DNA of 64,000 nt, from IMG/VR virus record IMGVR_UViG_3300036770_007539, positions 62,001-126,000 of that record; one strand, 5' to 3'. The notes under the pieces were generated by a model, which was not told the origin of the DNA, did not search any database, and saw only the letters and a program-made list of their open reading frames with translations. Shown in pieces: positions 26,944 to 64,000 of this stretch (position 1 is its first letter; each line of letters begins with the position of its first letter). The translations under genes were made by a program, and so were the position numbers.

Positions 26944-27423
26944 ATGTCTAGACCTTCAATAGATTACTCAAACTTAGAGAATGACTTAAATAAATCTAAT
27001 AAAAAAGTTTTTAAATTATCAGATGTTCAACATAAAATTCGTAAAGTTGCATTTGATGTTGTTAGATTTATTGATGGCTCTGATATTGAAGGCTTGTGGA
27101 AAATAGACAAGAATCAACAAGGAGAATATATTGTAGCTCTTTATGATGATTCTGTAGACTCTCTAGAAAAGACTGCATCTGATAAAACTGGATGGAAAGT
27201 TGTTTTATCAAAGCAAAATGATTTGCATGTCTTTTATAAAGAAGAGCCTATAATTAGATTAGCCAGCACTGATTTAGGTATTCCCGAAGAAGAAATGACG
27301 TTGGTTCCAACGTATCTTCCTAATAAACTAGCTAATAATTCGAAATTAGTTAGAGGGCTTTTAAATCAGTTGTCTGAATCTGAGCGTCAAGAATTGTATA
27401 AGAAATATCCTGAACTTGCTTGA
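26944..27423 (+). CDS. hypothetical protein, first gene of the head block
   Basis: AGGAG RBS; KVAF and KTAS motifs. Confidence 0.75.
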   Translation: MSRPSIDYSNLENDLNKSNKKVFKLSDVQHKIRKVAFDVVRFIDGSDIEGLWKIDKNQQGEYIVALYDDSVDSLEKTASDKTGWKVVLSKQNDLHVFYKEEPIIRLASTDLGIPEEEMTLVPTYLPNKLANNSKLVRGLLNQLSESERQELYKKYPELA

Positions 27424-27437
27424 ATTTAGGAAAATAA

Positions 27438-29057
27438 ATGGATTTTAATCAATTAAACAGTTTTATTTTAAAGACAGCAGAAGCAGTAAAAGAACAAGAA
27501 AGCTTTTTTACTGGAGTATTAGCTAAAAAAGCCGAGCAATTAGCTGAAGTTTTTCCTTACGATATTACGGTCGTAGGCATGTATAATTTCTTAAATAAAA
27601 GAGCTAATTCTCAATCGATGATTTCTCGCTCAGAATTAAAAAAGACATATAATACACTGTATAGCAATAATAATAAATTTGCCACTTATTTTGCCGATGA
27701 ATTAGGTACAAGCTCACAACAAGAAGCTAAACAAGTTGATGATAGAGAAGGGGAAGACTTATTAGTTATTGCAAATAAAAATGTTGATTCTAATTTAGTT
27801 GATACTTTATCTTCATTATTTGATGGCGGTAAAAACGCCGTAATTAAAACGTACACTAAGAAAGCTGCTGTCGCAGCTGAGAAGAATACAATTTATACAT
27901 TAAATTCTTTAGGAATTCATCCTAAATTAGCAGAGGTAGTTGCTGGAAATGATGCATGGTTGGTTTGCCGAGCTGCCTTTGAAACTCCAAAGGGAGAAAC
28001 TTCTGCATTGGTACCAGTTGAAATAGTTGATGGTCAGCCCGTCCTTCCCAATTCATTAGTCTCTTCGGAAGGTCTTATTGAATTAACTGCGTCCACTCTT
28101 TCTGATTACTTGACAAAAAATGCTGGAAAATTATTAAAAATTAATGCTGAGCAAGTATTGAATTTTATTTCAAAGCAAGCCGAGCCATTATCTGAAGTTG
28201 AGCTTGCATTGTTCCGATTAAAAACAGCTTCGGGCAATGAAGTTGTTTTGGACGCACCCGGAGTATTGCTACAAAATCCAAACCTTGACAGAGATGTCAT
28301 TGATGTTCAAATGCCGTCATTTGAGGTTCCAGAAGAATATCAATCTGTTGGAGAAAGACTATCATCTAAAGCTGGTGAAGCCGAGTTAATTCATGGCAAG
28401 CAAGCAATTAATAAAGGCAGAGAATTAATCTTAAGAAAGCTATCTTCTTTTGGATATCAAGCTCAGGTCGGAGTAGCATCATCAGATAAAGAAGGAATTG
28501 TTTACGCTGCTTCTATCGATGGAATTAGAGGTTTTAAAGTACCAGTAAAAATTGCTAATTCACAAGTGTTGCTTCCCACAATGGTTGTAACCGAAAGCTC
28601 TATTAAAGAGTTCTCACCAGAAGGCATTAGCGAAGTAATGCACGAATCTAATGATTTGCAAGCTATGGCAATGGCTTCGCCTCTCTATGACTTAAAGCCT
28701 CAAGAATTATTTGTAAGTTTAGCAGCTGCATTGCAAGAAGAGAATTTTGACAAAGCAGAAGATGCCTTGCATATTCTTAGAGAATCTGGAGATTCTCACT
28801 TTTATAATATGGCATTTAATATTTATAAGCAGGCTCTTAAAGGAGAATTTAACATTCAAAAGCAAGCCTCTTGTGGGTGCTCTCATCCAGTTAAAACAGC
28901 TAATAGCTCAAGCTTAATTTGTAGTCATACTGGACTAGCTGTAAACAAAGTTTATCAAGACAAGTTTGGTCAGTGCCGTCCATTGCACCGCAGAGGAATG
29001 GAGGATGGTTCTGAATCAGCGCATTTCGTAACCTCAAAAGTATATTGGAACTGCTGA
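27438..29057 (+). CDS. hypothetical virion/head protein with an internally duplicated domain
   Basis: 539 aa; several KxA motifs; VPVEI..LP and VPVKI..LP repeats. Confidence 0.75.
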   Translation: MDFNQLNSFILKTAEAVKEQESFFTGVLAKKAEQLAEVFPYDITVVGMYNFLNKRANSQSMISRSELKKTYNTLYSNNNKFATYFADELGTSSQQEAKQVDDREGEDLLVIANKNVDSNLVDTLSSLFDGGKNAVIKTYTKKAAVAAEKNTIYTLNSLGIHPKLAEVVAGNDAWLVCRAAFETPKGETSALVPVEIVDGQPVLPNSLVSSEGLIELTASTLSDYLTKNAGKLLKINAEQVLNFISKQAEPLSEVELALFRLKTASGNEVVLDAPGVLLQNPNLDRDVIDVQMPSFEVPEEYQSVGERLSSKAGEAELIHGKQAINKGRELILRKLSSFGYQAQVGVASSDKEGIVYAASIDGIRGFKVPVKIANSQVLLPTMVVTESSIKEFSPEGISEVMHESNDLQAMAMASPLYDLKPQELFVSLAAALQEENFDKAEDALHILRESGDSHFYNMAFNIYKQALKGEFNIQKQASCGCSHPVKTANSSSLICSHTGLAVNKVYQDKFGQCRPLHRRGMEDGSESAHFVTSKVYWNC

Positions 29058-29827: not shown

Positions 29828-29847
29828 TTTAACTTAACAGATATATT

Positions 29848-29883
29848 AATAAGCAGGGCAAAAGTTGCCCTGCTTATTTTTTT
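29848..29883 (+). terminator. rho-independent terminator
   Basis: AATAAGCAGGGCAA-aag-TTGCCCTGCTTATT followed by a T-run. Confidence 0.8.
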
Positions 29884-29891
29884 GGAGCTTT

Positions 29892-30608: not shown

Positions 30609-32433
30609 AATCAATAAAACAGCATATCCTCAAGGTCATGCCGATACCCACATTAAATCTTATGATTTAAATAAATGGACGAAGACATCTCATGATATTT
30701 CTATTTATGCTAGACAGGGCTATGATTATAATAAAATAAAAGACGAATTAACAAAAAATTGGGACGAAATGGAAAAAAAAGATTTTGCACATTGGATGAA
30801 ATACTATCAAAGCAATAGCCAGAACGCCTATAAAAAAGCACAATATCTTGAAGTTGCTCCTGGTGCTTTTGTTCCTGGTGCCATGCTTTCTAGTTCGCCC
30901 GATTTGAATGACTTAAAGACAAAAATTAAATTACCAGAAGAAGAAGATCCCCAATTTAAAATTAATAAAAAAATTAGATCTATTCTCAATAGATTAACCT
31001 CTGCTGAGAAACTTGCCACAGATCCGGATGTTCAAAGAGAATTATCCAAGCGATTAGATATTGGTTTGCATAAATGGCTTGAAGAATTACAAAGAGTAAA
31101 AAGATTAATACAAATTGCTCCTATTAAACACGCAAATTCTTCTATTTTAGAGGATTTAATTTTTAAAGAAGCAAATATATTGGCACACAAAGGTTTTCCC
31201 AAAACCGCACAAGAATTAATAAAAGTTGCACAACTTATTCCTACGCCCAAAGATCCTCAAGGATCCCCACCTGCCCCTGCGCCCGCTCCAAATCTTCCTG
31301 GTGGTCCCCCTGGTCCTCCTTTAGACATGCCTCCTCCGCCTGATGCACCTCCTGGCGCTCCTCCTGGTCCTGGTGTTCCTCCAGGCGGACCTCCTGGCGC
31401 ACCCCCAGCACCTCCAGGCGGCGGGCTAATTCCCACCGATCCTAGCCAGCTTCCTCCGCTTAAACCAAATCCTCCAAAGCCTGCAGAAAAGCCAAAGCCC
31501 AAAGGGCAAGAAGCATTGGATGAAATGCTTGGCAATTTAAATTCAAATAAAAATAAAGATAATAATAATATCGTAGACCCTCTTGTAGATGATTTGGCAG
31601 GAATGACAATTCAAGCCAAAGAAGATGAGTTTGCTGAGATAGAAATTGTTGCTCAAGCTCTTCCTCCAGAAATGGCTACAACGCCTGTAGATGTTCCATT
31701 TTCAGCGCCATCAGCTATTCCTGTGCCATCCCCAGAACCAACTGGATTGCCAAATGCTAATCTTCCCGCATCAACTCCAGTAAAGGCTCCCCCTGCTTCA
31801 GCAGTTAAGCCTAAACCAACAATTGAAGTTTCTGAAGATGAAGATAAATTTGCAGACACTGTAATTCATAAAAAGACAGATGACTTATTAGAAAGTGCTC
31901 TTTCTTCAATTACAATAACAGATGTAATTGAAAGACTAGATACTTTAGTTAACTTATTTAGAACTAGAGAGATACCAAGACAATTAGCCATCATCGATCT
32001 TATGATGGATCAATTAAATTTAAGTTCATTCTTCCCAGGTCTAGCAGAAGCTTCTTCTAAAAGCTTGGAAAGCAATCAATATGCTCTTTCTCGTATTGAA
32101 GAAGTTTTATCTAAGCTCAAGGGCTCAATTAAAAATGACAAATCTAAAGAAATAGATCTTTTAGGTCAAGAAGCATCTACATCTCCTGATGCACTTGATG
32201 TAGAAGGTGTTAGATCGAGTCTACAGTCCTTAGAAGATAAGGAGAAAGCAAGAAAACAACAAAAGAAACAAGAGGAATTAGCAAAAATAGAAGAAGAAAT
32301 TCCAGAAATAGAAGTAGAAGAAGACTTGGCGCAACCAGTAGAAATGCCTGCCAGCATGACTGGAAGAACAGCTCCATTGGCTCCTCCAATTACGGCTCCA
32401 ACGCCTCCAGCCGCAATCAGACCAACGATATAA
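30601..32433 (+). CDS. large Pro-rich head-block protein
   Basis: MNKINKTA|Y start; ~80-aa P/G tract at 31250-31500. Confidence 0.75.
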   Translation: MNKINKTAYPQGHADTHIKSYDLNKWTKTSHDISIYARQGYDYNKIKDELTKNWDEMEKKDFAHWMKYYQSNSQNAYKKAQYLEVAPGAFVPGAMLSSSPDLNDLKTKIKLPEEEDPQFKINKKIRSILNRLTSAEKLATDPDVQRELSKRLDIGLHKWLEELQRVKRLIQIAPIKHANSSILEDLIFKEANILAHKGFPKTAQELIKVAQLIPTPKDPQGSPPAPAPAPNLPGGPPGPPLDMPPPPDAPPGAPPGPGVPPGGPPGAPPAPPGGGLIPTDPSQLPPLKPNPPKPAEKPKPKGQEALDEMLGNLNSNKNKDNNNIVDPLVDDLAGMTIQAKEDEFAEIEIVAQALPPEMATTPVDVPFSAPSAIPVPSPEPTGLPNANLPASTPVKAPPASAVKPKPTIEVSEDEDKFADTVIHKKTDDLLESALSSITITDVIERLDTLVNLFRTREIPRQLAIIDLMMDQLNLSSFFPGLAEASSKSLESNQYALSRIEEVLSKLKGSIKNDKSKEIDLLGQEASTSPDALDVEGVRSSLQSLEDKEKARKQQKKQEELAKIEEEIPEIEVEEDLAQPVEMPASMTGRTAPLAPPITAPTPPAAIRPTI

Positions 32434-32438
32434 ATTAA

Positions 32439-33382: not shown

Positions 33383-33383
33383 C

Positions 33384-33979: not shown

Positions 33980-34945
33980 ATGACTATTAAAATTGCTCAA
34001 CAATACACAGCTGGTGGAAACTCCTATTTAGAGGGGGAGCGTATGACTCCAGAAGAATTTTTAAAAGGTACTTCTATGAGTGACGTATCCGATCTTCGTG
34101 TAGAAATTGAGCTTTCTCCCGAAACAGAGATGGAAGAAGAGCTTATGGAACATAGCCCAAAAGTAGAGGGTGAAATTCATGTTTCAAGCGATGATGAAGA
34201 TTTTGAATTTGATGAAAAGAAAGAATTTTCTTTTATTTTAGGTAAAGTTCCAGGGTCTGATTCTGAGGAGGAAATTGAAGAGCCTTCAGAATTACAAGTT
34301 TCCGAAGATGATGACAAAATTCAAATTGAAGATGATCCATGGAAATGGAAGCATGAAAAATTCTTACATTGGCTAGAAGATAAATTAAAAAATGTTCCAA
34401 AACACAATGGCAAAGATGTTTCTGGTTTAGAAAAAGCCATGGCTTATTTAGAACATTTAGACAAAGAATGCTCTAAAGCAAGTAGAACTGATTTAAATAA
34501 CGTGATTGATACTCCCAAGCTAGAAGATGCTCGTAAGCAAATTATTGATGGCATCGATCGATTATTTGATAGATTGCAAAAAGTCAATGCCATTAGAGGT
34601 AAAAAAGGCAAAGGTATGAAAAAGAAAGCCTCTGAAGACAACTCAGAAGGCTTTGTAAAAGAAGCTAAATCAATTCATTTTGAAGTTAATGTACCATATT
34701 TTATTAGCTTATTAGCTAGGATTTGCATTAATGCTTCTGTTTCTGCTGGGCATGATATTGAAGAAGTTTTTATGGATTTAGCTAAAAAATATGAATTAAC
34801 AAAACAGCAGAAATTAGAAGTAGTAACATTAATTGAAGATATGGGCTATGCTTCTGTTTGGAGAGATCGCTCTAAGATGCTAGATGAAGAAATTGATTTA
34901 ACATCATCTGAAAACGGTGATTGGGCAGCTCAATATCCAGCTTGA
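33980..34945 (+). CDS. acidic head-block protein
   Basis: MTIKIA|Q start; KKAS and KEAK internal motifs. Confidence 0.75.
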   Translation: MTIKIAQQYTAGGNSYLEGERMTPEEFLKGTSMSDVSDLRVEIELSPETEMEEELMEHSPKVEGEIHVSSDDEDFEFDEKKEFSFILGKVPGSDSEEEIEEPSELQVSEDDDKIQIEDDPWKWKHEKFLHWLEDKLKNVPKHNGKDVSGLEKAMAYLEHLDKECSKASRTDLNNVIDTPKLEDARKQIIDGIDRLFDRLQKVNAIRGKKGKGMKKKASEDNSEGFVKEAKSIHFEVNVPYFISLLARICINASVSAGHDIEEVFMDLAKKYELTKQQKLEVVTLIEDMGYASVWRDRSKMLDEEIDLTSSENGDWAAQYPA

Positions 34946-46865: not shown

Positions 46866-47597
46866 ATGATTGACAAGTTAGCAGCATCATTAGATATGTC
46901 TTTTAAAGTTCCAGATTCTGAAAAAAGAATCGCTCAAACATCTTTGAGGAACTTTTTAACTACCGTAAATGGTCTTTCCATTGCCAAAGACCATTTGGAT
47001 TTAATGTATGGTCCATTTAAGAAAGCTCAATCTATTTCAGTAGAGGCTTTGACAAAATTTAGGGGAAAGTTAAATAGATTTAAAAATCAAATGAAAAAAA
47101 ATTTTAAAAAAGTAAGAGAACATGCTTTTAATGCATTAAAAACTTTTAATTATTTTTCAACTGATACTCATTGTATAGAATTAATTAATGCTTTCAAAGA
47201 GTCAATGAATGATTTAATTCAATCGGTTATTAAGTTTATTGAAATTTTAAATGATTTTAAAGTAGATGACTTTAAAGATAAAGTTATTATTGCCATTGAT
47301 AATATCAAAAAAGAATCGGCTCAAATAGAATCTTTAATTAGAGATAGGATTATTGATCATATTAAAAAGAATATAATTGGAGAAAGTTGGATCACTAGCG
47401 ATAATAATGTTAAATCTTTGGAAGAAAAAGTTCCAATGGTTATAGAGATTTATAAAAAAATTAATGAGGGCAAAGATTTGAATGATCACGAAAGCTTTGT
47501 TCAAATTCAAAAAAAACCACAAAGTTTAAATTTCAGCGACTCTCAAAGAGTTTTGTATCCTCAAGATATGAGACAAGAAGGTCAGACCAGCACATAA
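46866..47597 (+). CDS. helical hypothetical head-block protein
   Basis: ATG 46866; MIDKLA|A. Confidence 0.7.
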   Translation: MIDKLAASLDMSFKVPDSEKRIAQTSLRNFLTTVNGLSIAKDHLDLMYGPFKKAQSISVEALTKFRGKLNRFKNQMKKNFKKVREHAFNALKTFNYFSTDTHCIELINAFKESMNDLIQSVIKFIEILNDFKVDDFKDKVIIAIDNIKKESAQIESLIRDRIIDHIKKNIIGESWITSDNNVKSLEEKVPMVIEIYKKINEGKDLNDHESFVQIQKKPQSLNFSDSQRVLYPQDMRQEGQTST

Positions 47598-52475: not shown

Positions 52476-52748
52476 ATGAAATTGCAATTTAATATCGCCT
52501 CTGAAATGAATGAAATTTTACAAAGTTCACTTGTAAAAAGCGCATCTGTTGTTGAGCAAAAAACAAGTAAAAATTATGATGAAATTTCATCTCATATTAT
52601 AAATTTATCAGAGATGGCTATAGAGTTAGACAATCGAGGAATGAATAAAACGGCTTCTTCTTTAAGAAAGACAGCTCGAATGTTTCTTGATTCTGTTGAA
52701 ATTAATAGCCAAGCATATAAAATTGCAGAACTTTACGGACTAGTTTGA
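52476..52748 (+). CDS. small head-block protein carrying the shared helical module
   Basis: VKSAS; LSEMAIELDNRGMNKTASSL. Confidence 0.7.
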   Translation: MKLQFNIASEMNEILQSSLVKSASVVEQKTSKNYDEISSHIINLSEMAIELDNRGMNKTASSLRKTARMFLDSVEINSQAYKIAELYGLV

Positions 52749-52757: not shown

Positions 52758-55700
52758 ATGATAAAATCAAATAATTCTATTGCTTTAGATATGGACAGTT
52801 TAATTCAAAAAAAATTAGAATTAAATAAAACTGCTAAAAAAAATAAAGTTAAATGTTGCAGCAAATGTGGAGAATCTTGTAAATGCGACAAAGATTGTCC
52901 TTGCAATTCTAGCTGTTCTTCTGATTGCTCTAACTGTTATGACATGAGTAAAAAGTCATATCAAGAAATATTTAATTTTATTTTAAAAACATCTGAAAAA
53001 GTTGATAATTTAGGATTTGATAAAATTGCAACTGAGCTTTTAAAAGCATCTTCTAATTTGGATTCTGAGCTACAAGAAAAAAATAAAGATTTAAATTTTG
53101 CAAGAACTAGAAGACCTAAAGCGACTGAGGATGCTAAAAAAACTGAAAAAGCGGCTAAGAAAGCTGAAGAGGAGGCTAAGAAAGCTGAAGAGGAGGCTAA
53201 AAAAGCTGCTGAAGAAGCCGCCCGAGCCGCCGATGCCGCTGCAGAAGAAGCCGCTAAAGAAGCCAGAAGAGCTTCCGAAGAAGCTAATGCCAGAAGGAGA
53301 AGATTAATGTCTGGAATTGCTGAAATTCCCTCTCAGACAGAGAAAAAAACCGAGCCAGCTTCTCCTGAAGTGGTCGTTACAAAAATACCATATTCTGGAC
53401 CAGCAGTCGGAGCAAAAAAATCAAAACCCAGAAAAACCTCCGATAAACCTTCCAATGTACAACGAACAACAGATCCTAGCACTGGAGAAACTGTAGTCAC
53501 GGTTCCGTCTATTTCTAAGCAGCCTAGCGCTGTTAGAACTCCCAAGAATAAAAGCAAGAGCCTGCAGGAGAAACCTAAAGAGAACAAGAGAACTAAAGAA
53601 GACTTAGAGCTAGAGAGAAGAACTCTAGAAGATTTTGAAGGTTTTGAAGGAGAAAGAGAATACGACGAGTCAATAGAATTATTTAAAAAGAAACCCATAC
53701 TTGAGGGCATGACTTTTCGAGATTTGGAAAGCCGAGAATCTCTTGAAGACATCATTGATGATAATGGAAAGCGTAAAGGCGAAGGCAAACGTAAACCCAA
53801 ATCATCTGAAGAATATAAAGAAGCACTCGAACTACAGATGATGGGGGATGTTGAATTAAAAAGAATAAATAGAAAAATTGAAAATCTCAGATCTGCAACA
53901 GGTATTGATCCAAAAGAAAAAAAAGAACAATTAGAAGAATTAGAAAAATTAAAAAATTCTACAATAGAAAAAAAGAAAAAAGAAATAGAAGAAAAAATTG
54001 AAAAATATAAAAAAGAACAATCTAAAGAAGAACCTAAAAAAGAAGCTCCTCTTGCGTCCACTACCAGATCTAGATCTCAAGAAAATTGGAGATACATATC
54101 GCCTCAAGAGTATAAGAATAAACTCATTACAGAGTTAATGGAAGGATTGTTAAAGAAAAAAAATAAAATAAGAGAACTTAAATCAAAAATACGTCTAGCC
54201 CCTGAAGGGACGAATAACACTGAAGAGAAAAAACAATTAGAAGAATTAGAAAAATCATATGAAAATGATGTAGAAAATGGTCAAAAAGAAATAAATGAAA
54301 AAGTTGAAAAATATATAAAATTTTTTAAAAGACAACTTGAAAAGAGGGAGGAGGCTGCAAAATCTAAAGTCAACCACCTCATAAGCCCTATAATAGAGGG
54401 AATTCAAAGACTTTCAAGAGAAAATCTTGACGAAGGTATTGTAGAGATTAATAAAGAATTAGCTAAGGCTGGAGGGAGTTCCAGTGTTGGCTCTATGGTT
54501 CAATCAATAAATAATTTATTAAATTATGAACATAATTTAAGACGTGAAAGAGAAATTTCTAAAAGAATTAACAGAATACTTGCTATTGAAAAAGCAGAAC
54601 TTATTCATTTAGAAAATCAGTTTGATTTATTTGAAAAAGAACAAGGCTCTAAAATAAAACAATTAAAAAAAGATAAAAGCATATCTAACAAAGATAAAAA
54701 AAATAAAAGAGAACAACTAATGGCAGAAGCAGATGCTGAGAGGGCTTTCTTAAGCGATAAACAAAAAGAATTTAACGAAATGTTTCAAATGCTAAGAAAA
54801 GAGCTTTTAAAGCTCCCAGTAGAAGAATTGCATCCTGGGCAACAACCCACCATACCAAATTCAATATCTTATCAAAAAGCATATAATATGTTTAAAAAAG
54901 ATTATGGACATTGGTGGTCTTATGAAAAATTTAAAGAAAGATTAAATTCTTACTTTTCAAATTTATCATACGATGATATAAAAGAATTTTATGAATCTAT
55001 TGTAATAAATAAAGAATTTCCATTATCAAAACAAACTGAATTTATTAATTATTTAAAACCAGCCGCTAGCGCGCCAACTCTTCCCAGCGAATTGGTTCCT
55101 TCATTGGAGTTGGATAGAACTTTAACGGACACAGAGGCAATGAGAGAGATGGAAAGCATGCGAGCTGCAAAATTAAGAGCAAAACTTCTTAAAATAGAAA
55201 ATCCAACAGAAGAAGAAAAAGCTGAAGCAGAAAGATTGTCAAAAGTTATAATGGGCAATAAACAAAGACAATTAGCAGAAGATCTCAAAAAGCAAAAAGA
55301 AGAAGCGGTAGTTGGTGATAGACAAGCTCTTTTAAATAAATATATTTTAGATAAAAGAGATTCGATGATTGAAGAAAAAATAATAAACTTTGTGCCAAAA
55401 CTAATACGTGCCTTTGAACAAAAATATTTTCCTGTCACCATCGAACAAGAGGAACAAATAATAGAATTCTTGTCTATAAAAGTAGACCGAAGCTCACAAG
55501 AAGTTATCAGCGCTGTTTTTAATGACGAAATAACCGATGAATTGCTTCGACTTGTATATATTAAATTAACGAATGAATATCCTGTAGAAGATAAAAAAAC
55601 TGATTATAAAAAAATATTAAAAGAATACTTATTTGAAAATAAAGAAATTTTATCTTATTTTAGAAGATTAAAATCTAAATACAGTTTAAGCGAAGTACAA

Positions 55701-56839: not shown

Positions 56840-58231
56840 ATGTTTATTAAAAAGTTTGCAGAAGTAGATTTTGAAAATTTATTTGAAATAAATCTAAAAT
56901 CTTTAGAAAATAAAGAAAATCATTCTAAATCTAATTATTTAGAACATGCAATTAATTTTCTTAAAATTTCTGCAGATCTTTTGGATGAAATTGGTAAAGA
57001 AGAAGCAGCTGAAGAATTAACTCTTATTTTAGATGAACTTGCCGAAGTTGAATCAGATGATACAGATCATGAATCAGAAGAAGGACCGGAAGAAGAATTA
57101 GTAGACTCTTTAGGAAAACATATTCATGATCCGTCATTAGAAGGCACTGATTCTTCTGAAGAAATGCTCAGCCATATGAAAAATAAAGGCTGGATGTTTG
57201 GAAATCACCAACCTGCTTCTGGAATGATAATTATTCACGAAGATGCTGAGCCTTTTGAAAGTTCAAATAAAATGAAAGGTCCAGAATGTAAAGCTTGTGG
57301 TCAATGCGCTAATTGCTGCGATTGTAGCTCTTGCAATTACTGTGGTGATAAAATGGCAGACGATGCGTTATTTTGCGGAGATGCATGCGCTGATATGGCA
57401 GAAGATCAAGGCATGGTCTATGACTGCATGTCAGACGATGATGGCGCTGAAATGAGTGAAGAAGACGAAGAGGAGTATGAAGAAGGTGACGAGGAATCTG
57501 ATGAGATGGAAGAAGATGATGAATTAATGGAAGAAGATGATGAATTAATGGAAGAAGAGGAAGAGTTTAATAAAGAAGCAAATGATTTTTATGATCTTGG
57601 CGCAATGATGGCTCAAGAGCATGCTCAGATGAATTTAGTAAATGTTCTTGAAGCTGTCCTCGCTGTTGAGGAAGATCTTCCATTAGATGAAACTGAAGAA
57701 TTTGCTTTGGGCTATTTAGAAGCATGCGATTGCTCATTAGAAGAGGCTTTAAAACAATTTGAAGAAGTTCAAGAATATCTTGAAGAAAATGATTATGAAC
57801 CAAGATATTCTCTAGAAGAAGTTGAAAGACTTCTTTCGGATGATGAATTATCAGATGACCCAAGCGATGATTTCGATAATGAATTAGAAGGAATTATATC
57901 AAAACAAGAATCCTCTGAATCTATGGAAGAAGATGAGGACATCATAGACCTTGAAGAAGATGAAGATGAAGATGAAGATGAAGATGAAGATGAAGACGAA
58001 GAGGACGAAGAGGACGAGAACGAGGAAGGCGATGAATTAGATGTTAATGATGCTAGATCTAAACCAAAATGCAAAGGTTGGAAAAAATCACCCGTTGGTT
58101 CTCCAAGACAAAGAGCTTTTTGCCGTCGCCACTGCGGCATGAAGAAAAAATTAACTTCTAAGAAAGTCGCAGACGATCCAGATTCTTGCATTAATCAAGG
58201 CTTGCGTCGCTGGAAATGTCGTTGTTCCTGA
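56840..58231 (+). CDS. highly acidic protein with a Cys cluster and basic C-terminal domain
   Basis: Poly-E/D tracts; CKACGQCANCCDCSSCNYC; RAFCRRHCGMKKKLTSKKVADDPDSCINQGLRRWKC. Confidence 0.75.
   Translation: MFIKKFAEVDFENLFEINLKSLENKENHSKSNYLEHAINFLKISADLLDEIGKEEAAEELTLILDELAEVESDDTDHESEEGPEEELVDSLGKHIHDPSLEGTDSSEEMLSHMKNKGWMFGNHQPASGMIIIHEDAEPFESSNKMKGPECKACGQCANCCDCSSCNYCGDKMADDALFCGDACADMAEDQGMVYDCMSDDDGAEMSEEDEEEYEEGDEESDEMEEDDELMEEDDELMEEEEEFNKEANDFYDLGAMMAQEHAQMNLVNVLEAVLAVEEDLPLDETEEFALGYLEACDCSLEEALKQFEEVQEYLEENDYEPRYSLEEVERLLSDDELSDDPSDDFDNELEGIISKQESSESMEEDEDIIDLEEDEDEDEDEDEDEDEEDEEDENEEGDELDVNDARSKPKCKGWKKSPVGSPRQRAFCRRHCGMKKKLTSKKVADDPDSCINQGLRRWKCRCS
57952..58030 (+). repeat. 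(GAAGAT)n acidic microsatellite encoding (ED)n
   Basis: Read directly. Confidence 0.85.
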
Positions 58232-59302: not shown

Positions 59303-59339
59303 CGATATTAAGATATATAGTTTGACGCAAAAGGAATGT

Positions 59340-59660: not shown

Positions 59661-59667
59661 GGAATAG

Positions 59668-62600
59668 ATGAAAAAAGAAGATAATTTTATCAGCAGCCCA
59701 GTCCTTAGAGAATATTACAATACAGCCATTGAAAAAGGCTGGATTTCTAATGAAGTTGCAGTTAAAACTGCCTCATTGGAAGCTGATCGTTATTCTCCTA
59801 CTGGAAATCTAATGCAGGATTTAGTCAATCTTGCATTTGGTTTGCGAGAGGCGGGTCTATATTCTCAAGCTGAGTCTTTAGAGACAAAGATTAATATTTT
59901 CAAAAAAGCTCAAATAGAACTTGGGTTAATTGATCAAAAAAGCTTATTGATGCAGCAACATGCTCATCCTGAGAATGCTAAAATCGTTGATGCTCAAAAT
60001 GGCTGGGGCGTAGTTCATACAAATGTAGATAGACAACGTAAAATTTTAGAAACCCTAACACATCAACCCAAAGGAATGCATCAAGAAGCTATTAAAACAA
60101 TATCTCTTGCTGCTGCTGAAGCTTTGGGCTTATTAAAGTTAGCTCAAGATGATGGAGATGGGCTTGTAGAAAGTTCGCCTGGCGATGCATTGGGTGAAGA
60201 TGGGGAAGACATGGATGAGACAGTGCCAGAGTCTGGTCAAATATTGCCTTCTGGTAAATTGGTAGATCCTGCCATGGCGCAAAAAGTATCTGCCCATAAA
60301 AATATAACAAAAACAACATATGCTTCTATTAAAAATTCATTAAAAGCTATTAATGGAGCTTTTAGTAAAATTAAAAACAATACTAAACTCTTCTCCAAAG
60401 ATTCCATATTAAAAAATATGGAGAGCCCCACTTCTAAGTGGTATCTATCAGTTATTGGGGCAGATTCTGAGTCTCTTAAAAATTTAGAAAGACTAACTAG
60501 TAATTTTGGAACTACTCCAGAATCCGCTGCTGCAAAAATTGAAGCAATGGAATATGAGTCTTTAAAAAGTCTTATAACATCAGCAATGCCTGCCTATGGA
60601 GGATATGTTATAGGAACTAATTTTAGTTATCCAATGATGGCAGCTCCAGGAGCTAAAAGAGTAAGAAGCAGACAAGAAAGAAAAGAAAAAGCTGAAAGAG
60701 GCTTTTTCGATAAAATATTTGATTCAGAAACTAAATCTGAAGAAGTTGCTAAAGATACTACTCCAGAAGAAATGAAACTGGACATAGTAGAAAAAGCAAA
60801 GTACGATGATCGATACAAGCAAAATAAAAATTCAATTTGGTCAGGAATTATGAGCTATGCAGACCGTCCAAAATTGGGCGGAATCGAGCAGTCGCCTGAA
60901 AAAGTTGCTAGATTGGCAAACGCTATCTCCCAGCATATTTCTAGCGAGAGCGAAAAATTATTTTCAGAAGATAATATTCAAGCAGCAGGCGCTGCTGCAA
61001 TAGCTAAATATTCTACAGTTGTTAATACATTAAATAAAATTTCAACTCAAATTAATGTTGGATTAAACGCCATTTATCCAGACCGAGTAGAGTTATTTAC
61101 ATCTATTACAAAAAGGTCTGCGGCGCTATCAAGATATTTAAATGACCAAAAAGATGAGTTGATTCCAGTTTCTTCTCTTGGGCTCTTTCAAGAGATTCTA
61201 GGAAACGTAGCAGCTATCAATGCCTCTGCTTTAAATGCCGTTTCTGTATTTGAAACCAATCCTATTAGCACAGAGCTTGAATCTCCTAGGGTATCTTCTA
61301 AGAAGGCAAAGCCTATTTTAGATAATTTGGTTTACTGCATTAACATGATGGATCAATATGCTGATTATTTGAGAGTAAAAGCTCCTAATGGTCCAGATTA
61401 TAAGAAAGTCACAAATTATTATAATAAAATGATGGCTATTCATCAAGCCGTTAATGCCAATCAAAATAAAACTTGGGCAGACGTTCAAGCCGCCATTGCA
61501 GGTAAAGCTGGATTGAGTTTTGAATCTTATGATCATCTTAATTCTTATATTGCAAATCTTAGAAACCGAGTTGCGCAAGCTGTTGCTCAAAGCCCTGGAT
61601 TAGGAGTTAAGGCAAGCGATGATAATCAAGTGGTAAAATTGGGTCAATCCATGCTTGAAGAAGCAGTAAGTAATGTTAAAGGAACTATAGGAAATCTTTT
61701 CGGGGGTATACCTGCGGCTGCGGGTCCCGTTGCTACTCCCGCAGCCGCAGCAGCTGCAATTGGAGCAGTAGGAGCAATAGGAGAACCCTTGACTCCTGAA
61801 CCAAAAAAAGTGGATTCATCAGTTAAAACCCCAGATGTAGCTGCGTTTAATCCTGCCCCTTCAGGCGGCGTGGCTGCGGGCGGCGGGGCTGCAGGCGCAG
61901 GCTCTGGTGGAGTATCTAGTGGCAAAGGACCTTCTGCTCCAGCAACAAGCAAAGATAAACTTTCTGCAGCCAGACAAAAAGTTTGGGAAATGCAAGAAAT
62001 GCTTCAAGAATTATCAGAGTTCTTAACAAAGAACCCAAGTAAAGCCCCAGAAGCAAATAAGGCTGATTTTGATACCATTATGTTCGTTGGGAGATCCAAT
62101 CAAAAAGGAAGCCTAGATGGAGATTGGGGCAGAAGAACCACCAGCTCAATCACCGCTGCAAACAAAGCAACTAAATTAAGTTTAACTCCTTCTCCTTCAA
62201 ATAAAGCTGATGAATCAGTTTTATCGAATGAAGCTACTAAGAACACTCAAGCCATACAAAATTGGCTAGACAATAACGGATGGACAAGAGCAGGGGAGAG
62301 ACCAGCAGTGGAGCTTGACAGAATTTCCATGGCTATATTTGATTATACTTCCGAGGCAACTGCCCAACAAGATCCAAATGGAACTCCATTAAAAGATAAA
62401 GATCTATCTTCCTTATATGCTTTTTATAAATATTTAGAAAAATTTGTTTCAGAACTAAGTATATTGCCTAAAGATCAATGGTTTTTAATATTTAGCTGGT
62501 TTAACGGCAGAGTGGAGGCATTACTTGGATCTGAACAAATTCCAGCAGGTAAAAAACCTATTTTTAATACTTATAAAAATTATATTTCTAATTTAAATTT

Positions 62601-63222
62601 AAAATTTAATCAATTAATTGATGCTTATAAAATTACTGAAGGTCAAGTTCTTGGAGAAGACTTCTTTAAGCTTGATTCTGGAGCGGGCGGTGGCGGAATA
62701 CCTATTGGTCAAAGCGGAGTGCCAGGTCAAGGTGGTCCGGACGGTGGCTGGGGACCTGGTGGTCAAGTCGGTCCCGGAGGCAAAGGATTTCAATATGGTA
62801 CCATTGAAGAAGGAGAAGGCGATGTAGATCTCGATGAACCGCCCTTTGGTCCTAATGGAATTAATTTAAACTCTCCTCACTTTGATGGTTTTGAATTAGG
62901 ATTCAAGAAAAAATTCCCCATATCCTATTTTAAATATAGAGCCGTTGATGTCGCAAGAACTTTATTTGCAAAAAACCATCGGTACACAGAATCTACAAGA
63001 GAATTGACCCTTAAGTGTGTTGATGATTACTCAATATTTTTAAGTAATTTGCAAGTAGCAGTTTCTGCTGCTCTTGATAGTTATAGAGAAAAAGCCAATC
63101 CTCCTGATGAAGTTTTTGAAATAGTATATAAAAACAGTGTAACAATTGGTAGAATGATCAGCAGTCACTTAAGTCAATTAACTGATGTGGCAAGACAAAT
63201 GGCAGCCGGAAGAACTCTATGA
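59668..63222 (+). CDS. 1184-aa virion/internal protein with a peptidoglycan-binding-like motif
   Basis: KTAS, KKAQ, KLAQ motifs; shared helical module; VWEMQEML...DGDWGRRT; Gly/Ala linkers. Confidence 0.7.
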   Translation: MKKEDNFISSPVLREYYNTAIEKGWISNEVAVKTASLEADRYSPTGNLMQDLVNLAFGLREAGLYSQAESLETKINIFKKAQIELGLIDQKSLLMQQHAHPENAKIVDAQNGWGVVHTNVDRQRKILETLTHQPKGMHQEAIKTISLAAAEALGLLKLAQDDGDGLVESSPGDALGEDGEDMDETVPESGQILPSGKLVDPAMAQKVSAHKNITKTTYASIKNSLKAINGAFSKIKNNTKLFSKDSILKNMESPTSKWYLSVIGADSESLKNLERLTSNFGTTPESAAAKIEAMEYESLKSLITSAMPAYGGYVIGTNFSYPMMAAPGAKRVRSRQERKEKAERGFFDKIFDSETKSEEVAKDTTPEEMKLDIVEKAKYDDRYKQNKNSIWSGIMSYADRPKLGGIEQSPEKVARLANAISQHISSESEKLFSEDNIQAAGAAAIAKYSTVVNTLNKISTQINVGLNAIYPDRVELFTSITKRSAALSRYLNDQKDELIPVSSLGLFQEILGNVAAINASALNAVSVFETNPISTELESPRVSSKKAKPILDNLVYCINMMDQYADYLRVKAPNGPDYKKVTNYYNKMMAIHQAVNANQNKTWADVQAAIAGKAGLSFESYDHLNSYIANLRNRVAQAVAQSPGLGVKASDDNQVVKLGQSMLEEAVSNVKGTIGNLFGGIPAAAGPVATPAAAAAAIGAVGAIGEPLTPEPKKVDSSVKTPDVAAFNPAPSGGVAAGGGAAGAGSGGVSSGKGPSAPATSKDKLSAARQKVWEMQEMLQELSEFLTKNPSKAPEANKADFDTIMFVGRSNQKGSLDGDWGRRTTSSITAANKATKLSLTPSPSNKADESVLSNEATKNTQAIQNWLDNNGWTRAGERPAVELDRISMAIFDYTSEATAQQDPNGTPLKDKDLSSLYAFYKYLEKFVSELSILPKDQWFLIFSWFNGRVEALLGSEQIPAGKKPIFNTYKNYISNLNLKFNQLIDAYKITEGQVLGEDFFKLDSGAGGGGIPIGQSGVPGQGGPDGGWGPGGQVGPGGKGFQYGTIEEGEGDVDLDEPPFGPNGINLNSPHFDGFELGFKKKFPISYFKYRAVDVARTLFAKNHRYTESTRELTLKCVDDYSIFLSNLQVAVSAALDSYREKANPPDEVFEIVYKNSVTIGRMISSHLSQLTDVARQMAAGRTL

Positions 63223-64000
63223 ATCTCTCCAAAGAAGAAATAAGCCTTTTAAGAGAATCTTTTCTTTTTGAAGAAGTTGAAAAGCTTTGCTTTCCTCAAC
63301 ATATTCAAAAAACAGCAGGATTGTTTGAAACCCTAGGTCTATCTTCTGTTCAAAATTTTTTACAAGACTTTTCTTCAAGATACATAAAAGACTCTTCCGA
63401 AACCCCAGGCGGATACATTACATCTATGCTTAATGTTTTATCAGCTGGCGTTTTATTTAGAATTAATCCTATACTGGGAGCAATCTATCTTGCTTTAGAT
63501 GCCTTCGGCTATAACATTTCTGATATGGCTAAAAAATTGGTTAAATACCTCAAGCCTAAATTAGAAGAAAAAGGCGAAGTCTCTAGCAAAGAAATTAACG
63601 AAGCAGCTGCCTCATTATTTGGAGGAATGGGAGAGTTTGCCATCAGCATGGCTGATGATGGGATTGTCGCCTCTGCTAGTAAAGAAAGTATCTCAGAAAT
63701 TATATTTGAAGAAATTCTTAAAGAAGCATCCCTAATTGAAGGGATAGATAAAATTGCCGCTCAAGAAATTGAAAAAACAGCAATTGGATGGCAAGATGAA
63801 GTAGATAAATATTATAAATCAAAATATTATGGCAAAGGAACTCCCGGTTCTCCGTTTTTATTCGGAGGAGGAAAAGAAGTTCCCATTATTCAAAGAATAT
63901 TTGGCAATCTTTTTAATAGACCAAATGGCGCCAGTAGACTTAAATGGTTCGGCGTCGGAATAGTTGCCTGGATAGTTAAATCTCTTTTCGCAGGTGCCCT
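63219..64000 (+). CDS. 3'-truncated virion protein with hydrophobic segments
   Basis: ATGA-coupled; open to the window end (MNLSKEEISLLRES...IQKTAGLFE...WFGVGIVAWIVKSLFAGA); not in ORF track. Confidence 0.75.
   Translation, partial: MNLSKEEISLLRESFLFEEVEKLCFPQHIQKTAGLFETLGLSSVQNFLQDFSSRYIKDSSETPGGYITSMLNVLSAGVLFRINPILGAIYLALDAFGYNISDMAKKLVKYLKPKLEEKGEVSSKEINEAAASLFGGMGEFAISMADDGIVASASKESISEIIFEEILKEASLIEGIDKIAAQEIEKTAIGWQDEVDKYYKSKYYGKGTPGSPFLFGGGKEVPIIQRIFGNLFNRPNGASRLKWFGVGIVAWIVKSLFAGA

What the first reader, a model, noticed from the sequence alone, without database searches (positions are those of the whole stretch)
26944..64000. Shared K-x-A motif across ~15 head-block proteins: candidate prohead-protease cleavage code
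Seen in sequence: unrelated head-block proteins begin with a short leader ending in hydrophobic-x-K-x-A. Examples: MNKINKTA|Y (30601), MTIKIA|Q (33980), MIEMVKIA|S (43094), MIKNA|Y (45378), MNKRMYKLA|A (45796), MIDKLA|A (46866), MTTKKQA|Y (49990), MFIKKFA|E (56840), ..FILKTA|E (27438), ..LVKSA|S (52476), ..LNKTA|K (52758), ..AVKTA|S (59668), ..IQKTA|G (63219). The motif also recurs at domain/linker boundaries: portal FSKKA|S, LIKVA|Q before the Pro tract, YKSA|Q, VKMA|Q, LKLA|Q, LLKEA|G, LEKEA|S. Established: T4 gp21 and phiKZ gp175 head proteases remove propeptides from many head proteins at short consensus sites ending in Glu. Inference: the protease at 47797 processes a large set of head and ejection proteins at an Ala-P1/Lys-P3 site, so the motif would mark virion cargo.
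Basis: partly seen in the sequence, partly recalled or inferred. Interest (0 to 1): 0.85.

Follow-up and report, generated by a model that had tools for sequence, protein, structure and literature searches.

The report
Predicted head-protease cleavage motif, jumbo phage
A short motif (hydrophobic-x-Lys-x-Ala) is strongly over-represented at the starts and domain junctions of head-gene proteins of this giant phage and about 50 relatives, including Bacillus phage G. It is most likely the site where the phage's own head-maturation protease cuts, so it could be used to predict the packaged head proteins of uncultured giant phages from sequence alone.

Summary
All 20 quoted strings are at the stated coordinates. 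In an unbiased scan of about 157,000 three-position patterns, [ILVM]-x-K-x-A is the top pattern in the first 40 residues of head-block proteins (15 observed, 1.6 expected, p 2e-10). It is not enriched in the replication block.

The enrichment replicates in 47 related jumbo-phage loci (217 observed, 47.5 expected). It also replicates in the head block of Bacillus phage G, but not in its tail block.

Sites are conserved where flanking sequence is not:
- a portal site in 66 of 69 portals
- about 13 sites in the protease-scaffold polyprotein
- seven-residue leaders followed by hypervariable sequence

In 33 relatives two window genes are one ORF, with the motif at the junction.

The gene at 47797 encodes an intein-interrupted HK97-type prohead protease fused to a scaffold. 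It is orthologous to phage G gp19 and carries the motif at its own N-terminus.

The cleavage-code reading is therefore well supported but indirect, because no cleavage was observed. Three refinements apply. P5 hydrophobic counts as much as P3 Lys. P1 can be Ala, Ser or Gly. P3 is Ser or Thr in some relatives. This is a new specificity variant of the known T4/phiKZ-type head proteolysis.

The parts
47797..52398 (+). 1533-aa ORF made of a prohead serine protease (aa 1-107 plus 484 to about 640), an intein (aa 108-483) and a long scaffold-like tail (aa about 640-1533). It is the presumed enzyme and also a multi-site substrate.
   Evidence: PHROG 18299 head maturation protease 5.7e-13. NCBIfam NF045541 prohead protease/MCP fusion 9e-8 on the intein-less homologue. 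37% identity to phage G gp19. The AF2 model matches phage G gp19 (3e-14) and many COG3740/prohead proteases in BFVD. The polyprotein is conserved at 35-76% identity in 38 relatives.
48118..49245 (+). Intein with a homing-endonuclease domain (C108 to N483, followed by C484), interrupting the protease domain.
   Evidence: CFIAGTKIL...VTHN|C boundaries. PHROG endonuclease hit at aa 234-419. Close relatives L002, L003 and L005 have the protease without it.
49318..49320 (+). Invariant His (CLDHKSS), candidate catalytic His.
   Evidence: H133 is invariant in the 25-sequence alignment A2. Position.
49471..49473 (+).
   Evidence: S184 is invariant in A2. The only hhalign segment against HK97 gp4 puts it on the Ser of GMSVGF, but that alignment is not significant (E 0.6).
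47800..47814 (+). Protease N-terminal site FVKIG|E (P1 Gly).
   Evidence: h-h-K-h-G|E (Ala at P1 in a few) in all 25 protease N-termini. Phage G gp19 has FPVKIA|G.
47890..47904 (+). Second motif in the protease N-terminal region, FEKIA|K.
   Evidence: F-x-K-x-A in 18 of 18 aligned polyproteins. It lies in a predicted helix, so cleavage here is less certain.
49978..49992 (+). Shine-Dalgarno-like AAGGA plus in-frame ATG (49990). Probably a nested start for a scaffold protein with the leader MTTKKQA|Y.
   Evidence: AAGAGGAAA(A/C/T)T-ATG is conserved upstream of the homologous Met in 12 of 13 relatives. The arrangement resembles lambda C/Nu3 (own knowledge).
49996..50010 (+). Scaffold site 1, TKKQA|YFQGGGG.
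   Evidence: x-[NK]-K-x-[AG]|Y-[FY]-Q-G is conserved in the aligned relatives (78% match the strict pattern).
50263..50277 (+). Scaffold site 2, AKKQA|YFQGGGG (second copy of the repeat).
   Evidence: K-[EQ]-[AG]|Y-[FWYH]-x-G is conserved at this column.
50470..50484 (+). Scaffold site FLKAA|A.
   Evidence: RF[VI]KA[AS]|N column, 89% occupancy.
50680..50694 (+). Scaffold site MYKSA|Q immediately before the Pro/Ala-rich tract.
   Evidence: L[IV]K[KS]A|Q at 94% occupancy, followed by a variable Pro-rich linker.
51238..51312 (+). Cluster of three scaffold sites: FSKYA|S, LAKQA|A and MVKMA|Q.
   Evidence: The AFVKYA| column has 94% occupancy and the IVKRA|E column 100%.
39153..39167 (+). Portal site FSKKA|S (P1 = aa 72), upstream of the conserved portal core.
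   Evidence: G-h-x-K-x-[AGS]|Q is present at the aligned position in 66 of 69 portals, inside an otherwise poorly conserved Ser-rich region. Phage G portal has FQMAKQA|A at aa 20. The portal is identified by PHROG 16240, 1e-51.
30610..30624 (+). Leader site INKTA|YPQG of the 610-aa protein at 30601.
   Evidence: 35 family members have a variable leader followed by K-x-A|YP(N/Q), with K at P3 in about 85% and A or S at P1 in about 95%.
31216..31230 (+). Internal site LIKVA|Q before the Pro-rich linker of the 30601 protein.
   Evidence: h-x-[K/S/T]-x-A|[QE] is aligned in essentially all 35 homologues and is followed by a variable Pro/Gly linker.
33983..33997 (+). Six-residue leader MTIKIA|Q of the protein at 33980.
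   Evidence: In 46 homologues the M-[ST]-L-x-x-x-A|Q(E) leader is conserved while the following 20 to 40 residues are hypervariable with indels. P3 is K in the window's lineage and S or T in many others.
43103..43165 (+). Two sites in the protein at 43094: MVKIA|S (aa 8) and VVKVA|G (aa 24).
   Evidence: The first site varies (K/R at P3, A/S at P1). VVKVA|[GS] (IIKVA|G in one) is conserved in all 13 homologues whose N-terminal region aligns.
45378..45392 (+). Minimal five-residue leader MIKNA|Y of the gene at 45378.
   Evidence: The orthologous site LVK[LVI]A|K follows a leader of about 25 aa in 33 relatives. Five-residue leaders MxKxA occur 42 times against 12.1 expected, whereas MKxA occurs 3 times against 2.7.
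45808..45822 (+). Leader site MYKLA|A of the gene at 45796.
   Evidence: In 33 relatives this protein is the C-terminal half of one ORF of about 250 aa together with the 45378 homologue. The motif (KK[ML][VI]K.A|A) sits exactly at the junction.
46869..46883 (+). Leader site IDKLA|A of the gene at 46866.
   Evidence: M-I-K-K-[AS]|Y or x-K-L-A|[AS] in about 40 homologues.
27465..27479 (+). Site ILKTA|E (P1 aa 14) of the protein at 27438.
   Evidence: Present. Conservation could not be tested because the relatives' loci do not cover it.
52530..52544 (+). Site LVKSA|S (P1 aa 23) of the 90-aa protein at 52476.
   Evidence: Two further sites lie at aa 60 and 67.
52821..52835 (+). Site LNKTA|K (P1 aa 26) of the 1289-aa protein at 52758.
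56846..56860 (+). Leader site IKKFA|E (P1 aa 7) of the protein at 56840.
59758..59772 (+). Site AVKTA|S (P1 aa 35) of the 1184-aa protein at 59668. P5 is Ala, so it is a weaker match.
63303..63317 (+). Site IQKTA|G (P1 aa 33) of the protein at 63219, which runs past the window end (444 aa in the parent contig).

Best explanation
The window is the head-gene region of a jumbo phage (a 301-kb contig) from a large clade whose only cultured member is Bacillus phage G. The gene at 47797 encodes an HK97-type prohead serine protease. In this phage it is interrupted by an intein, and it is fused to a long scaffold.

The motif [LIMFVY]-x-K-x-[A>S,G]↓ has alternating P5, P3 and P1 side chains, as expected for a substrate strand docked in a protease cleft. 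It is most likely this protease's recognition and cleavage site.

Inside the assembling prohead the protease would:
- trim itself
- cut the scaffold into pieces at about 10 to 13 sites
- remove about 72 residues from the portal
- clip 5- to 35-residue leaders from about 15 other head-block proteins
- separate the domains of small polyproteins

Shown here: the enrichment, its restriction to head-block genes, its conservation across the clade, its placement at junctions, and the protease identity. Inferred: that the peptide bond after P1 is actually cut, that this protease does it, and that motif-bearing proteins are packaged.
For: 1. Statistics in the window. It is the top pattern of about 157,000 (p 1.9e-10), and the replication block is not enriched.
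2. Replication: 47 loci with portals 54-62% identical show 217 observed against 47.5 expected in the first 40 aa. In phage G the head block gp4-21 has 22 against 7.6 (z 5.1), whereas gp22-141, gp142-177 and the tail block gp178-189 give z of 1.0 or less.
3. Constraint is on P5/P3/P1 only. In the polyprotein, P3 K identity is 0.62 against a baseline K of 0.39, and P1 A is 0.75 against 0.40. P4 and P2 are 0.21 and 0.25, against an overall 0.40.
4. Sites lie at boundaries: the portal site in 66 of 69 portals ahead of the conserved core; sites before Pro-rich linkers; a 7-aa leader followed by hypervariable sequence.
5. Gene fusion and fission: the 45378 and 45796 homologues form one ORF in 33 relatives, with the motif at both the leader and the inter-domain junction. 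L054 fuses the 33384 and 33980 homologues with MPLAKTA|Q between them.
6. Leaders shrink to exactly five residues (MxKxA 42 vs 12.1) but not to four (MKxA 3 vs 2.7).
7. Protease identity. Its own N-terminus carries the motif in all relatives, as T4 gp21 and phiKZ-type proteases carry theirs (PMC10052503; own knowledge).
8. Precedent: mass proteolysis of head proteins at a 3-residue code in T4 (I/L-x-E) and in SPN3US/phiKZ (A-x-E) (PMC10052503, PMC12991175).
Against: - No direct evidence of cleavage is available. No virion N-termini were accessible, and the phage G mass-spectrometry paper (PMC7316594) is not held.
- Pfam gave no protease hit. PDB sequence and fold searches gave nothing. hhalign against HK97 gp4 was not significant. 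The AF2 model is only of moderate quality (pLDDT 69).
- Some conserved motif instances lie in predicted helices or coiled-coil scaffold (FEKIA at aa 32-36) and may be structural rather than cut.
- P3 is not always Lys at orthologous sites in relatives.
- The window's own protease/scaffold junction reads ELSKVE, not a match, where relatives have EL.K[LVI]A.
- Many counts in relatives are not phylogenetically independent.
- Most 'head-block' proteins have no assigned function, so their presence in the head is assumed from gene position.
Confidence: 0.66

Rival explanations
1. The motif is a capsid-targeting or scaffold/protease-docking signal that recruits proteins into the prohead, like a T4 CTS or an encapsulin cargo-loading peptide, but is not itself cut.
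For: The motif is retained in 5- to 9-residue leaders even after gene fission removed any need to separate domains. This suggests a role beyond separation. It is restricted to the head block.
Against: Ten or more conserved copies lie inside the scaffold and at inter-domain junctions of polyproteins. That is hard to explain by targeting alone. In T4 the CTS is also the cleaved propeptide (own knowledge), so targeting and cleavage are not exclusive.
Confidence: 0.12
2. The sites are cleaved, but by another protease (a host enzyme, or a second phage protease such as a ClpP-like one) rather than the 47797 product.
For: Staphylococcal phage 80alpha head proteins are processed by the host Prp protease (own knowledge). 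Phage G encodes ClpP/ClpX as well (10.1101/2024.12.16.628780). No assay links the motif to this enzyme.
Against: The motif co-occurs with this protease family from a GC-poor environmental phage to a Bacillus-group phage, so the hosts presumably differ. The protease's own N-terminus carries the motif in every relative. No other protease gene was found in the window's head block.
Confidence: 0.08
3. The motif is a structural or compositional by-product: amphipathic helices in K/A-rich coiled-coil proteins, Lys-rich codons after start codons favouring translation, or inheritance among homologues.
For: M-x-K is enriched after start codons in general. Some instances lie in predicted helices. Scaffold proteins are K/A-rich. 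Counts in relatives include orthologues.
Against: Per-protein shuffles control for composition. The replication block has the same K content and Lys-rich starts but shows no enrichment. An i, i+2, i+4 spacing is strand-like, not helical. Sites occur up to 70 or more residues from the start and at fusion junctions. Unrelated protein families share the motif. P4 and P2 are less conserved than average.
Confidence: 0.07

Closest known systems
T4 gp21 and phiKZ gp175 / SPN3US gp245 head proteolysis (I/L-x-E↓ and A/S/G-x-E↓ codes)
   Same: A phage-encoded prohead serine protease cuts itself, the scaffold, the portal and many minor or internal head proteins at a very short consensus. Substrates often carry short N-terminal propeptides, and the setting is a large-capsid phage (PMC10052503, PMC12991175).
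   Different: P1 is a small residue (Ala > Ser, Gly), not Glu. Lys is at P3 and a hydrophobe at P5. The enzyme is closest to phage G gp19 and COG3740/HK97-type proteases rather than the T4 gp21 family. Leaders can be as short as 5 residues. Nothing has been verified experimentally.
Herpesvirus assemblin (maturational protease), consensus (V/L/I)-x-A↓S
   Same: Ala at P1, a small or polar P1', and a hydrophobe upstream. The enzyme is fused in frame to its scaffold and cleaves the scaffold. Phage prohead proteases of the HK97 and T4 types share the assemblin fold (own knowledge).
   Different: Assemblin places the hydrophobe at P3. Here P3 is Lys and the hydrophobe is at P5. Assemblin has only two or three sites in total, against dozens of substrates here. 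No sequence similarity was detected.
HK97 gp4 prohead protease (MEROPS S78 / COG3740)
   Same: Best-supported fold family for the enzyme: BFVD hits to COG3740 proteases, PHROG 18299 and NF045541. His and Ser are invariant.
   Different: HK97 gp4 cuts gp5 after ...TFNK|SLGSD (sequence; cleavage position from own knowledge), which does not match this motif. HK97 has few substrates. There is no Pfam PF04586 hit and hhalign is not significant. This enzyme has a conserved Cys/His zinc-ribbon-like insert and a scaffold fusion of about 900 aa.
Lambda C/Nu3 (and P2 gpO) nested protease-scaffold genes
   Same: The protease and scaffold lie in one reading frame, with an internal in-frame start preceded by a conserved ribosome-binding site. 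This would give both a protease-scaffold fusion and a free scaffold.
   Different: Lambda C is an S49 (SppA-type) protease (own knowledge). Use of the internal start is inferred only from sequence conservation.
Bacillus phage G gp19 and its head block
   Same: Orthologous protease (37% identity; fold E 3e-14) and orthologous portal (34%). The same motif is enriched in the phage G head block, with leaders such as MKRLISKTA|A, FQMAKQA|A and MKRLIKKA|S.
   Different: Phage G has protease, gp20 and gp21 as separate genes rather than one 1150-aa fusion, and no intein. Its leaders share a longer M-K-R-L-x-K-K-A consensus.

Membership tests
Prohead-protease cleavage code (T4/phiKZ type of system) | A phage-encoded prohead protease gene in the head module next to scaffold and portal | tested here: met
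   The gene at 47797 is a head maturation protease by PHROG 18299, NF045541 and fold hits to prohead proteases. The portal is at 38952 and TerL at 35619.
Prohead-protease cleavage code (T4/phiKZ type of system) | A short consensus shared by many otherwise unrelated head proteins, above chance and absent from non-head proteins | tested here: met
   window; 47 relatives; phage G head versus tail and other genes.
Prohead-protease cleavage code (T4/phiKZ type of system) | The protease and scaffold themselves carry the consensus (autoprocessing and scaffold degradation) | tested here: met
   The motif is conserved at the protease N-terminus, and about 13 positions are conserved in the polyprotein.
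Prohead-protease cleavage code (T4/phiKZ type of system) | Mature virion proteins begin at P1' (mapped N-termini) | not testable with these tools
   No proteomic data for this phage. The phage G mass-spectrometry paper is not held.
Prohead-protease cleavage code (T4/phiKZ type of system) | Glu at P1 (T4 I/L-x-E; phiKZ/SPN3US A/S/G-x-E) | tested here: not met
   P1 is Ala, Ser or Gly. This is therefore a different specificity, not a member of the Glu-P1 group.
HK97-type prohead serine protease (S78 / COG3740) | Sequence-profile match to the family | tested here: inconclusive
   PHROG 18299 5.7e-13 and NF045541 9e-8, far below its curated cut-off. No Pfam hit. hhalign against HK97 gp4 gave E 0.6.
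HK97-type prohead serine protease (S78 / COG3740) | Fold similarity | tested here: met
   AF2 model (pLDDT 69). BFVD gave 59 hits at E<=1e-3, led by phage G gp19 and including several COG3740/prohead proteases. The PDB library gave no hit.
HK97-type prohead serine protease (S78 / COG3740) | Invariant catalytic His and Ser | tested here: inconclusive
   H133 (CLDH) and S184 (VSMGT) are invariant in 25 sequences. Equivalence to HK97 H65/S114 rests on a non-significant alignment.
Herpesvirus assemblin-type specificity | (V/L/I) at P3, Ala at P1, Ser at P1' | tested here: not met
   P1 Ala is shared. P3 is Lys and the hydrophobe is at P5. P1' is mostly Q, Y, S, G or A.
Nested protease/scaffold gene (lambda C/Nu3 type) | In-frame internal start with its own ribosome-binding site | tested here: met
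   A conserved GAGGA-type SD 5 to 8 nt before a conserved ATG in the window and in 12 of 13 relatives. Actual use of the start was not tested.
Intein | Cys at position 1, C-terminal His-Asn, nucleophile at +1, and absence from close homologues at the same site | tested here: met
   C108...HN483|C484. L002, L003 and L005 lack the 376-aa insert.

The most novel reading that the evidence does not exclude
A clade-wide proteolytic 'zip code', h-x-K-x-[A/S/G]↓, is read by an HK97-type protease in the phage G-like giant phages (hundreds of metagenomic genomes up to about 480 kb). It serves both as the ticket into the prohead and as the cut site. This would explain why it is kept as a bare five-residue MxKxA leader after gene fission and why it sits at the junctions of head polyproteins. 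If so, the packaged head and ejection proteome of uncultured megaphages could be read directly from sequence. The same short tag could also be used to load foreign proteins into these capsids or to predict host immune decoys that sense the protease.
Probability: 0.3. Interest if true: 0.75.

Novelty: new variant of a known kind. Interest (0 to 1): 0.62.

Why it matters
Mass proteolysis of head proteins at a three-residue code is established only for the T4-like and phiKZ-like lineages, both with Glu at P1. A second, chemically different code (Lys at P3, small residue at P1, hydrophobe at P5), tied to an HK97-type protease and conserved from phage G to environmental megaphages, would have four consequences.

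1. It would show that 'many-substrate' head proteases arose in another protease lineage.
2. It would give a sequence-only predictor of which of the many unannotated proteins of uncultured giant phages are head or ejected proteins.
3. It would explain gene fusion and fission events and nested starts in the head module.
4. It would define what a host sensor of this protease would have to mimic, since CBASS activation loops mimic the T4 gp21 motif (PMC12991175).

It is directly testable in phage G, which is in culture and has published virion mass-spectrometry data.

Tried and rejected
- DNA similarity of the protease gene to GenBank phages: no match.
- Pfam on 10 head-block proteins, including the intein-less protease: nothing except a weak DUF6321 hit.
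- PHROGs: only TerL, PhoH, portal, protease and tRNA nucleotidyltransferase were recognised.
- PDB sequence searches with a single sequence and with a profile: only chance hits.
- Foldseek against PDB: no significant hit.
- hhalign of the protease profile against HK97 gp4: not significant.
- ESM Atlas for the 778-aa and 1184-aa proteins: uninformative.
- tblastn of 29 phage G head-region proteins against the window: only portal and protease match. The major capsid protein was not found in the window.
- Literature: seven full-text searches and several papers read found no description of a K-x-A or Ala-P1 code for phage G or its relatives. The key phage G paper (J Mol Biol 2020, PMC7316594) is not held, so prior description there cannot be excluded.
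- The 2024 phage G particle proteomics was judged too unspecific to serve as a virion list, because it detects about 55% of nucleic-acid-metabolism ORFs.
- Rejected: a DNA-level signal (synonymous codon variation and frame controls).
- Rejected: simple K/A richness (shuffles; replication block as control).
- Rejected: K-x-A alone as the motif (rank 2 of 1600 but not Bonferroni-significant).

Full report
WHAT THE WINDOW IS

The window has about 32% GC and almost all genes are on the + strand. It is 100% identical to parts of two IMG/VR contigs, one of 301 kb, so it comes from a jumbo phage.

Positions 1 to about 26.9 kb are a replication and nucleotide-metabolism block, including a Pol III alpha-like protein and a DnaJ-like protein. 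From 26.9 kb onward lies the block that holds the following recognisable genes:
- TerL (35619)
- PhoH (37492, minus strand)
- portal (38952)
- a 1533-aa ORF (47797)

Most other proteins there match no family in PHROGs, Pfam, NCBIfam or the ESM Atlas. The closest cultured relative by portal is Bacillus phage G, at 34% identity over 70% of the protein. A portal-profile scan found 359 relatives in IMG/VR. The 80 loci fetched have portals 54-62% identical and sit on contigs of up to 480 kb.

THE OBSERVATION

Per-protein shuffles give:
- [ILVFMY]xKxA over the 30 head-block proteins: 55 observed, 24.9 expected (z 6.1).
- The same in their first 40 residues: 16 observed, 2.3 expected (z 9.1).
- The 35 replication-block proteins, which are even richer in Lys, show no enrichment: 19 vs 14.1 overall and 4 vs 2.1 in the first 40 residues.

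Because the pattern was chosen after seeing the data, I ran unbiased scans.
- Among 1600 two-residue patterns, K-x-A ranks second in head N-termini, but at p 3e-4 it would not survive correction.
- Among about 157,000 three-position patterns (20 residues plus 7 classes, 8 spacings), [ILVM]-x-K-x-A is the single best: 15 vs 1.6, p 1.9e-10, about 3e-5 after Bonferroni. All the next-best patterns are variants of it. The replication block's top list contains nothing similar.
- Codons at P3 and P1 vary synonymously, and the other five frames do not carry the signal.

The refinement is that the P5 hydrophobe is an integral part of the motif.

REPLICATION OUTSIDE THE WINDOW

In 47 related loci longer than 12 kb, the first 40 residues of + strand ORFs hold 217 motif instances against 47.5 expected. 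Whole proteins show 2- to 2.5-fold enrichment in nearly every locus.

In phage G, using the annotated genes gp1-189, enrichment is confined to the head block:
- gp4-21: 22 vs 7.6 (z 5.1)
- gp22-141: 29 vs 24.6
- gp142-177: 9 vs 10.5
- tail block gp178-189: 15 vs 11.8

Phage G head proteins start with leaders such as MKRLISKTA|A (gp13)...FQMAKQA|A (portal gp14)...KLSKVA|A (gp9), MSKKISRLKKTA|L (gp20) and FPVKIA|G (protease gp19). The lack of enrichment in tail genes is what a prohead-confined protease predicts.

CONSERVATION PATTERN

A logo of 263 non-identical N-terminal K-x-A sites shows P5 = L/M/I/F (Met enriched 7-fold) and P1' = Q (4.2-fold) or Y (3.5-fold).

Family alignments show the motif held in place while its surroundings drift:
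- The 33980 family keeps a seven-residue leader M-[ST]-L-x-x-x-A|Q, followed by a hypervariable acidic stretch full of indels.
- The 30601 family has leaders of variable length and sequence ending in K-x-A|YPN. It has a second site, h-x-[K/S]-x-A|Q, just before a Pro/Gly linker.
- The portal has G-h-x-K-x-[AGS]|Q at about residue 72-77 in 66 of 69 sequences. This lies inside a poorly conserved Ser-rich segment upstream of the conserved core.
- The 43094 family keeps VVKVA|G (with IIKVA|G in one member and Ser after the cut in another) in all 13 homologues whose N-terminal region aligns.

In the polyprotein of about 1150 aa (18 sequences, 35-45% identity), about 13 alignment positions carry the motif in 50-100% of sequences. 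There, P3 Lys and P1 Ala are far more conserved (0.62 and 0.75) than Lys and Ala elsewhere (0.39 and 0.40). P4 and P2 are less conserved than average (0.21 and 0.25, against 0.40).

An alternating i, i+2, i+4 constraint is what one face of an extended substrate strand in a protease cleft would give. It is not helical periodicity. At some orthologous sites in more distant relatives P3 is Ser or Thr. Lys is therefore the preferred residue, not an obligatory one.

JUNCTION EVIDENCE

In 33 relatives, the homologues of window genes 45378 (141 aa) and 45796 (102 aa) form one ORF of about 250 aa. Its layout is Met, a leader of about 20-25 aa, LVK[LVI]A|K, domain A, a linker, KK[ML][VI]K.A|A, then domain B.

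In the window and its close relatives L002, L003 and L005, the two domains are separate overlapping genes in different frames. Each retains the site in a minimal leader (MIKNA|Y and MNKRMYKLA|A).

One relative (L054) fuses the 33384 and 33980 homologues, with MPLAKTA|Q at the junction.

Across relatives, five-residue leaders MxKxA occur 42 times against 12.1 expected. Four-residue MKxA leaders are not enriched (3 vs 2.7). Leaders therefore seem to shrink to exactly P5-P1, with the initiator Met serving as the P5 hydrophobe. These counts include orthologues, so they illustrate the point rather than provide independent statistics.

THE ENZYME

The ORF at 47797 has three parts.
- A protease domain split by a 376-aa intein: C108 to HN483, followed by C484, with a homing-endonuclease domain.
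- The intein itself, which is absent from the otherwise 79-85% identical genes of L002, L003 and L005.
- A coiled-coil and Pro/Ala-rich tail of about 900 aa.

Evidence that it is a prohead protease:
- PHROG 18299 'head maturation protease', 5.7e-13.
- NCBIfam NF045541 'prohead protease/MCP fusion', 9e-8.
- 37% identity to phage G gp19.
- An AF2 model (pLDDT 69) whose best BFVD matches are phage G gp19 (3e-14) followed by many COG3740/prohead proteases.
- Invariant His (CLDH) and Ser (VSMGT), plus a conserved Cys/His insert.

Pfam, PDB sequence, PDB fold and hhalign-versus-HK97-gp4 comparisons were all negative or non-significant. Family placement is therefore 'HK97-type, divergent' rather than proven.

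The protease's own N-terminus reads h-h-K-h-G|E (Ala at P1 in a few) in all 25 relatives.

Upstream of the first NKQ[AG]|YFQGGGG site there is a conserved Met preceded by a conserved GAGGA-type ribosome-binding site. This suggests a nested in-frame start that would also yield a free scaffold protein, as in lambda C/Nu3.

MECHANISM PROPOSED

The protease-scaffold fusion and the nested scaffold co-assemble with the portal, the capsid protein and accessory proteins. After splicing of the intein, the protease becomes active in the prohead and cuts after h-x-K-x-[A/S/G]. It would:
- release itself
- fragment the scaffold at about 10 to 13 sites
- remove about 72 residues from the portal
- trim the short leaders
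- split the polyproteins of about 15 head-block proteins

The statistics, the conservation, the junction placement and the enzyme identity are shown. Bond cleavage, enzyme-substrate pairing and packaging of the substrates are inferred.

RIVALS

- A non-cleaved targeting signal. This is possible, and it may coexist with cleavage. The retention of the motif after gene fission hints at a recruitment role.
- Another protease doing the cutting.
- A structural or compositional artefact.

The artefact reading is contradicted by the shuffles, by the replication-block and phage G tail controls, by the strand-like spacing, and by the occurrence of the motif in unrelated families.

COMPARISON WITH KNOWN SYSTEMS

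Functionally this is the T4 gp21 or phiKZ gp175/SPN3US gp245 kind of system (PMC10052503, PMC12991175), but with a different code: a small P1 instead of Glu, Lys at P3, and a hydrophobe at P5. The enzyme also comes from a different protease lineage.

In P1 chemistry it is closest to herpesvirus assemblin ((V/L/I)-x-A|S), which differs at P3. HK97 gp5 is cut after ...TFNK|S (and own knowledge), which is not this motif.

I found no description of this code in the searchable literature. The 2020 phage G structure and mass-spectrometry paper could not be read, so earlier mention there cannot be excluded.

VERDICT

It is a new variant of a known kind. Interest is moderate to high, because it is clade-wide, predictive, and immediately testable in phage G.

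Noticed in passing
window 48118-49245 (+): An intein with a homing-endonuclease domain sits inside the prohead protease domain (C108...HN483|C484). It is absent from the close relatives L002, L003 and L005. It may also be present in L047, whose ORF is 1578 aa. Head maturation in this phage would depend on protein splicing.
   Followed up: partly
window 49978-49992 (+); relatives: A conserved Shine-Dalgarno sequence plus an in-frame ATG lies inside the protease-scaffold ORF. It is probably a nested scaffold gene (lambda C/Nu3-like) starting at 49990. The QEEN-M peptide conservation may reflect the ribosome-binding site.
   Followed up: partly
window 45378-46104 (+): Genes 45378 and 45796 overlap in different frames. 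They correspond to the two halves of a single ORF of about 250 aa found in 33 relatives. This is a gene fission, or possibly a frameshift site, within the linker just upstream of the motif. It is shared by L002, L003 and L005.
   Followed up: partly
L084 14982-17283 (window-equivalent about 68200-70500, beyond the window end): Two paralogous ORFs of about 265 aa have HTH-like N-termini (MIDKDTLSELYVNKNLTSYEIAQIY... and MKKIDIPKEKLIELYCENNLTMIKIAKIY...). They are separated by short ORFs and look like homing endonucleases, possibly in introns splitting a structural gene. The major capsid gene was not identified in the window.
   Followed up: no
window 49500-49600 (+); alignment A2 columns about 215-240: A conserved CxxC...C.H (zinc-ribbon-like) insert lies between the catalytic Ser and the C-terminal strands of the protease domain. 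It is invariant in 25 relatives and not known to me from HK97 or T4 proteases.
   Followed up: no
window 636-23739, N-termini of 8 replication-block proteins: [FWY]-S-x-x-D occurs 8 times in the first 40 residues of replication-block proteins against 0.6 expected (p 2e-7; about 0.04 after correction). The contexts look heterogeneous, for example a PHP-domain HTTYSVLDS, so this is probably chance.
   Followed up: partly
window 52758-56627 (+), aa about 30-60: The 1289-aa protein has a dense Cys-rich N-terminal stretch (KCCSKCGESCKCDKDCPCNSSCSSDCSNC) right after its predicted cleavage site. Its function is unknown.
   Followed up: no
L009/L086/L087 (Bacillus phage G gp13, gp20, gp38, gp56, gp65, gp141): Phage G leaders share a longer consensus, M-(x)-K/R-R-L-x-K-K-A|. 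It also occurs on genes outside the head block (gp38, gp56, gp65, gp141). These are candidates for dispersed head-internal proteins.
   Followed up: partly
window 50000-52000: The local GC rise to 0.42 coincides with the Pro/Ala-rich and acidic low-complexity parts of the scaffold region, not with a foreign insert.
   Followed up: no
window 37492-38799 (-): A PhoH-like gene is the only large minus-strand gene. It is inserted between the terminase and the portal.
   Followed up: no
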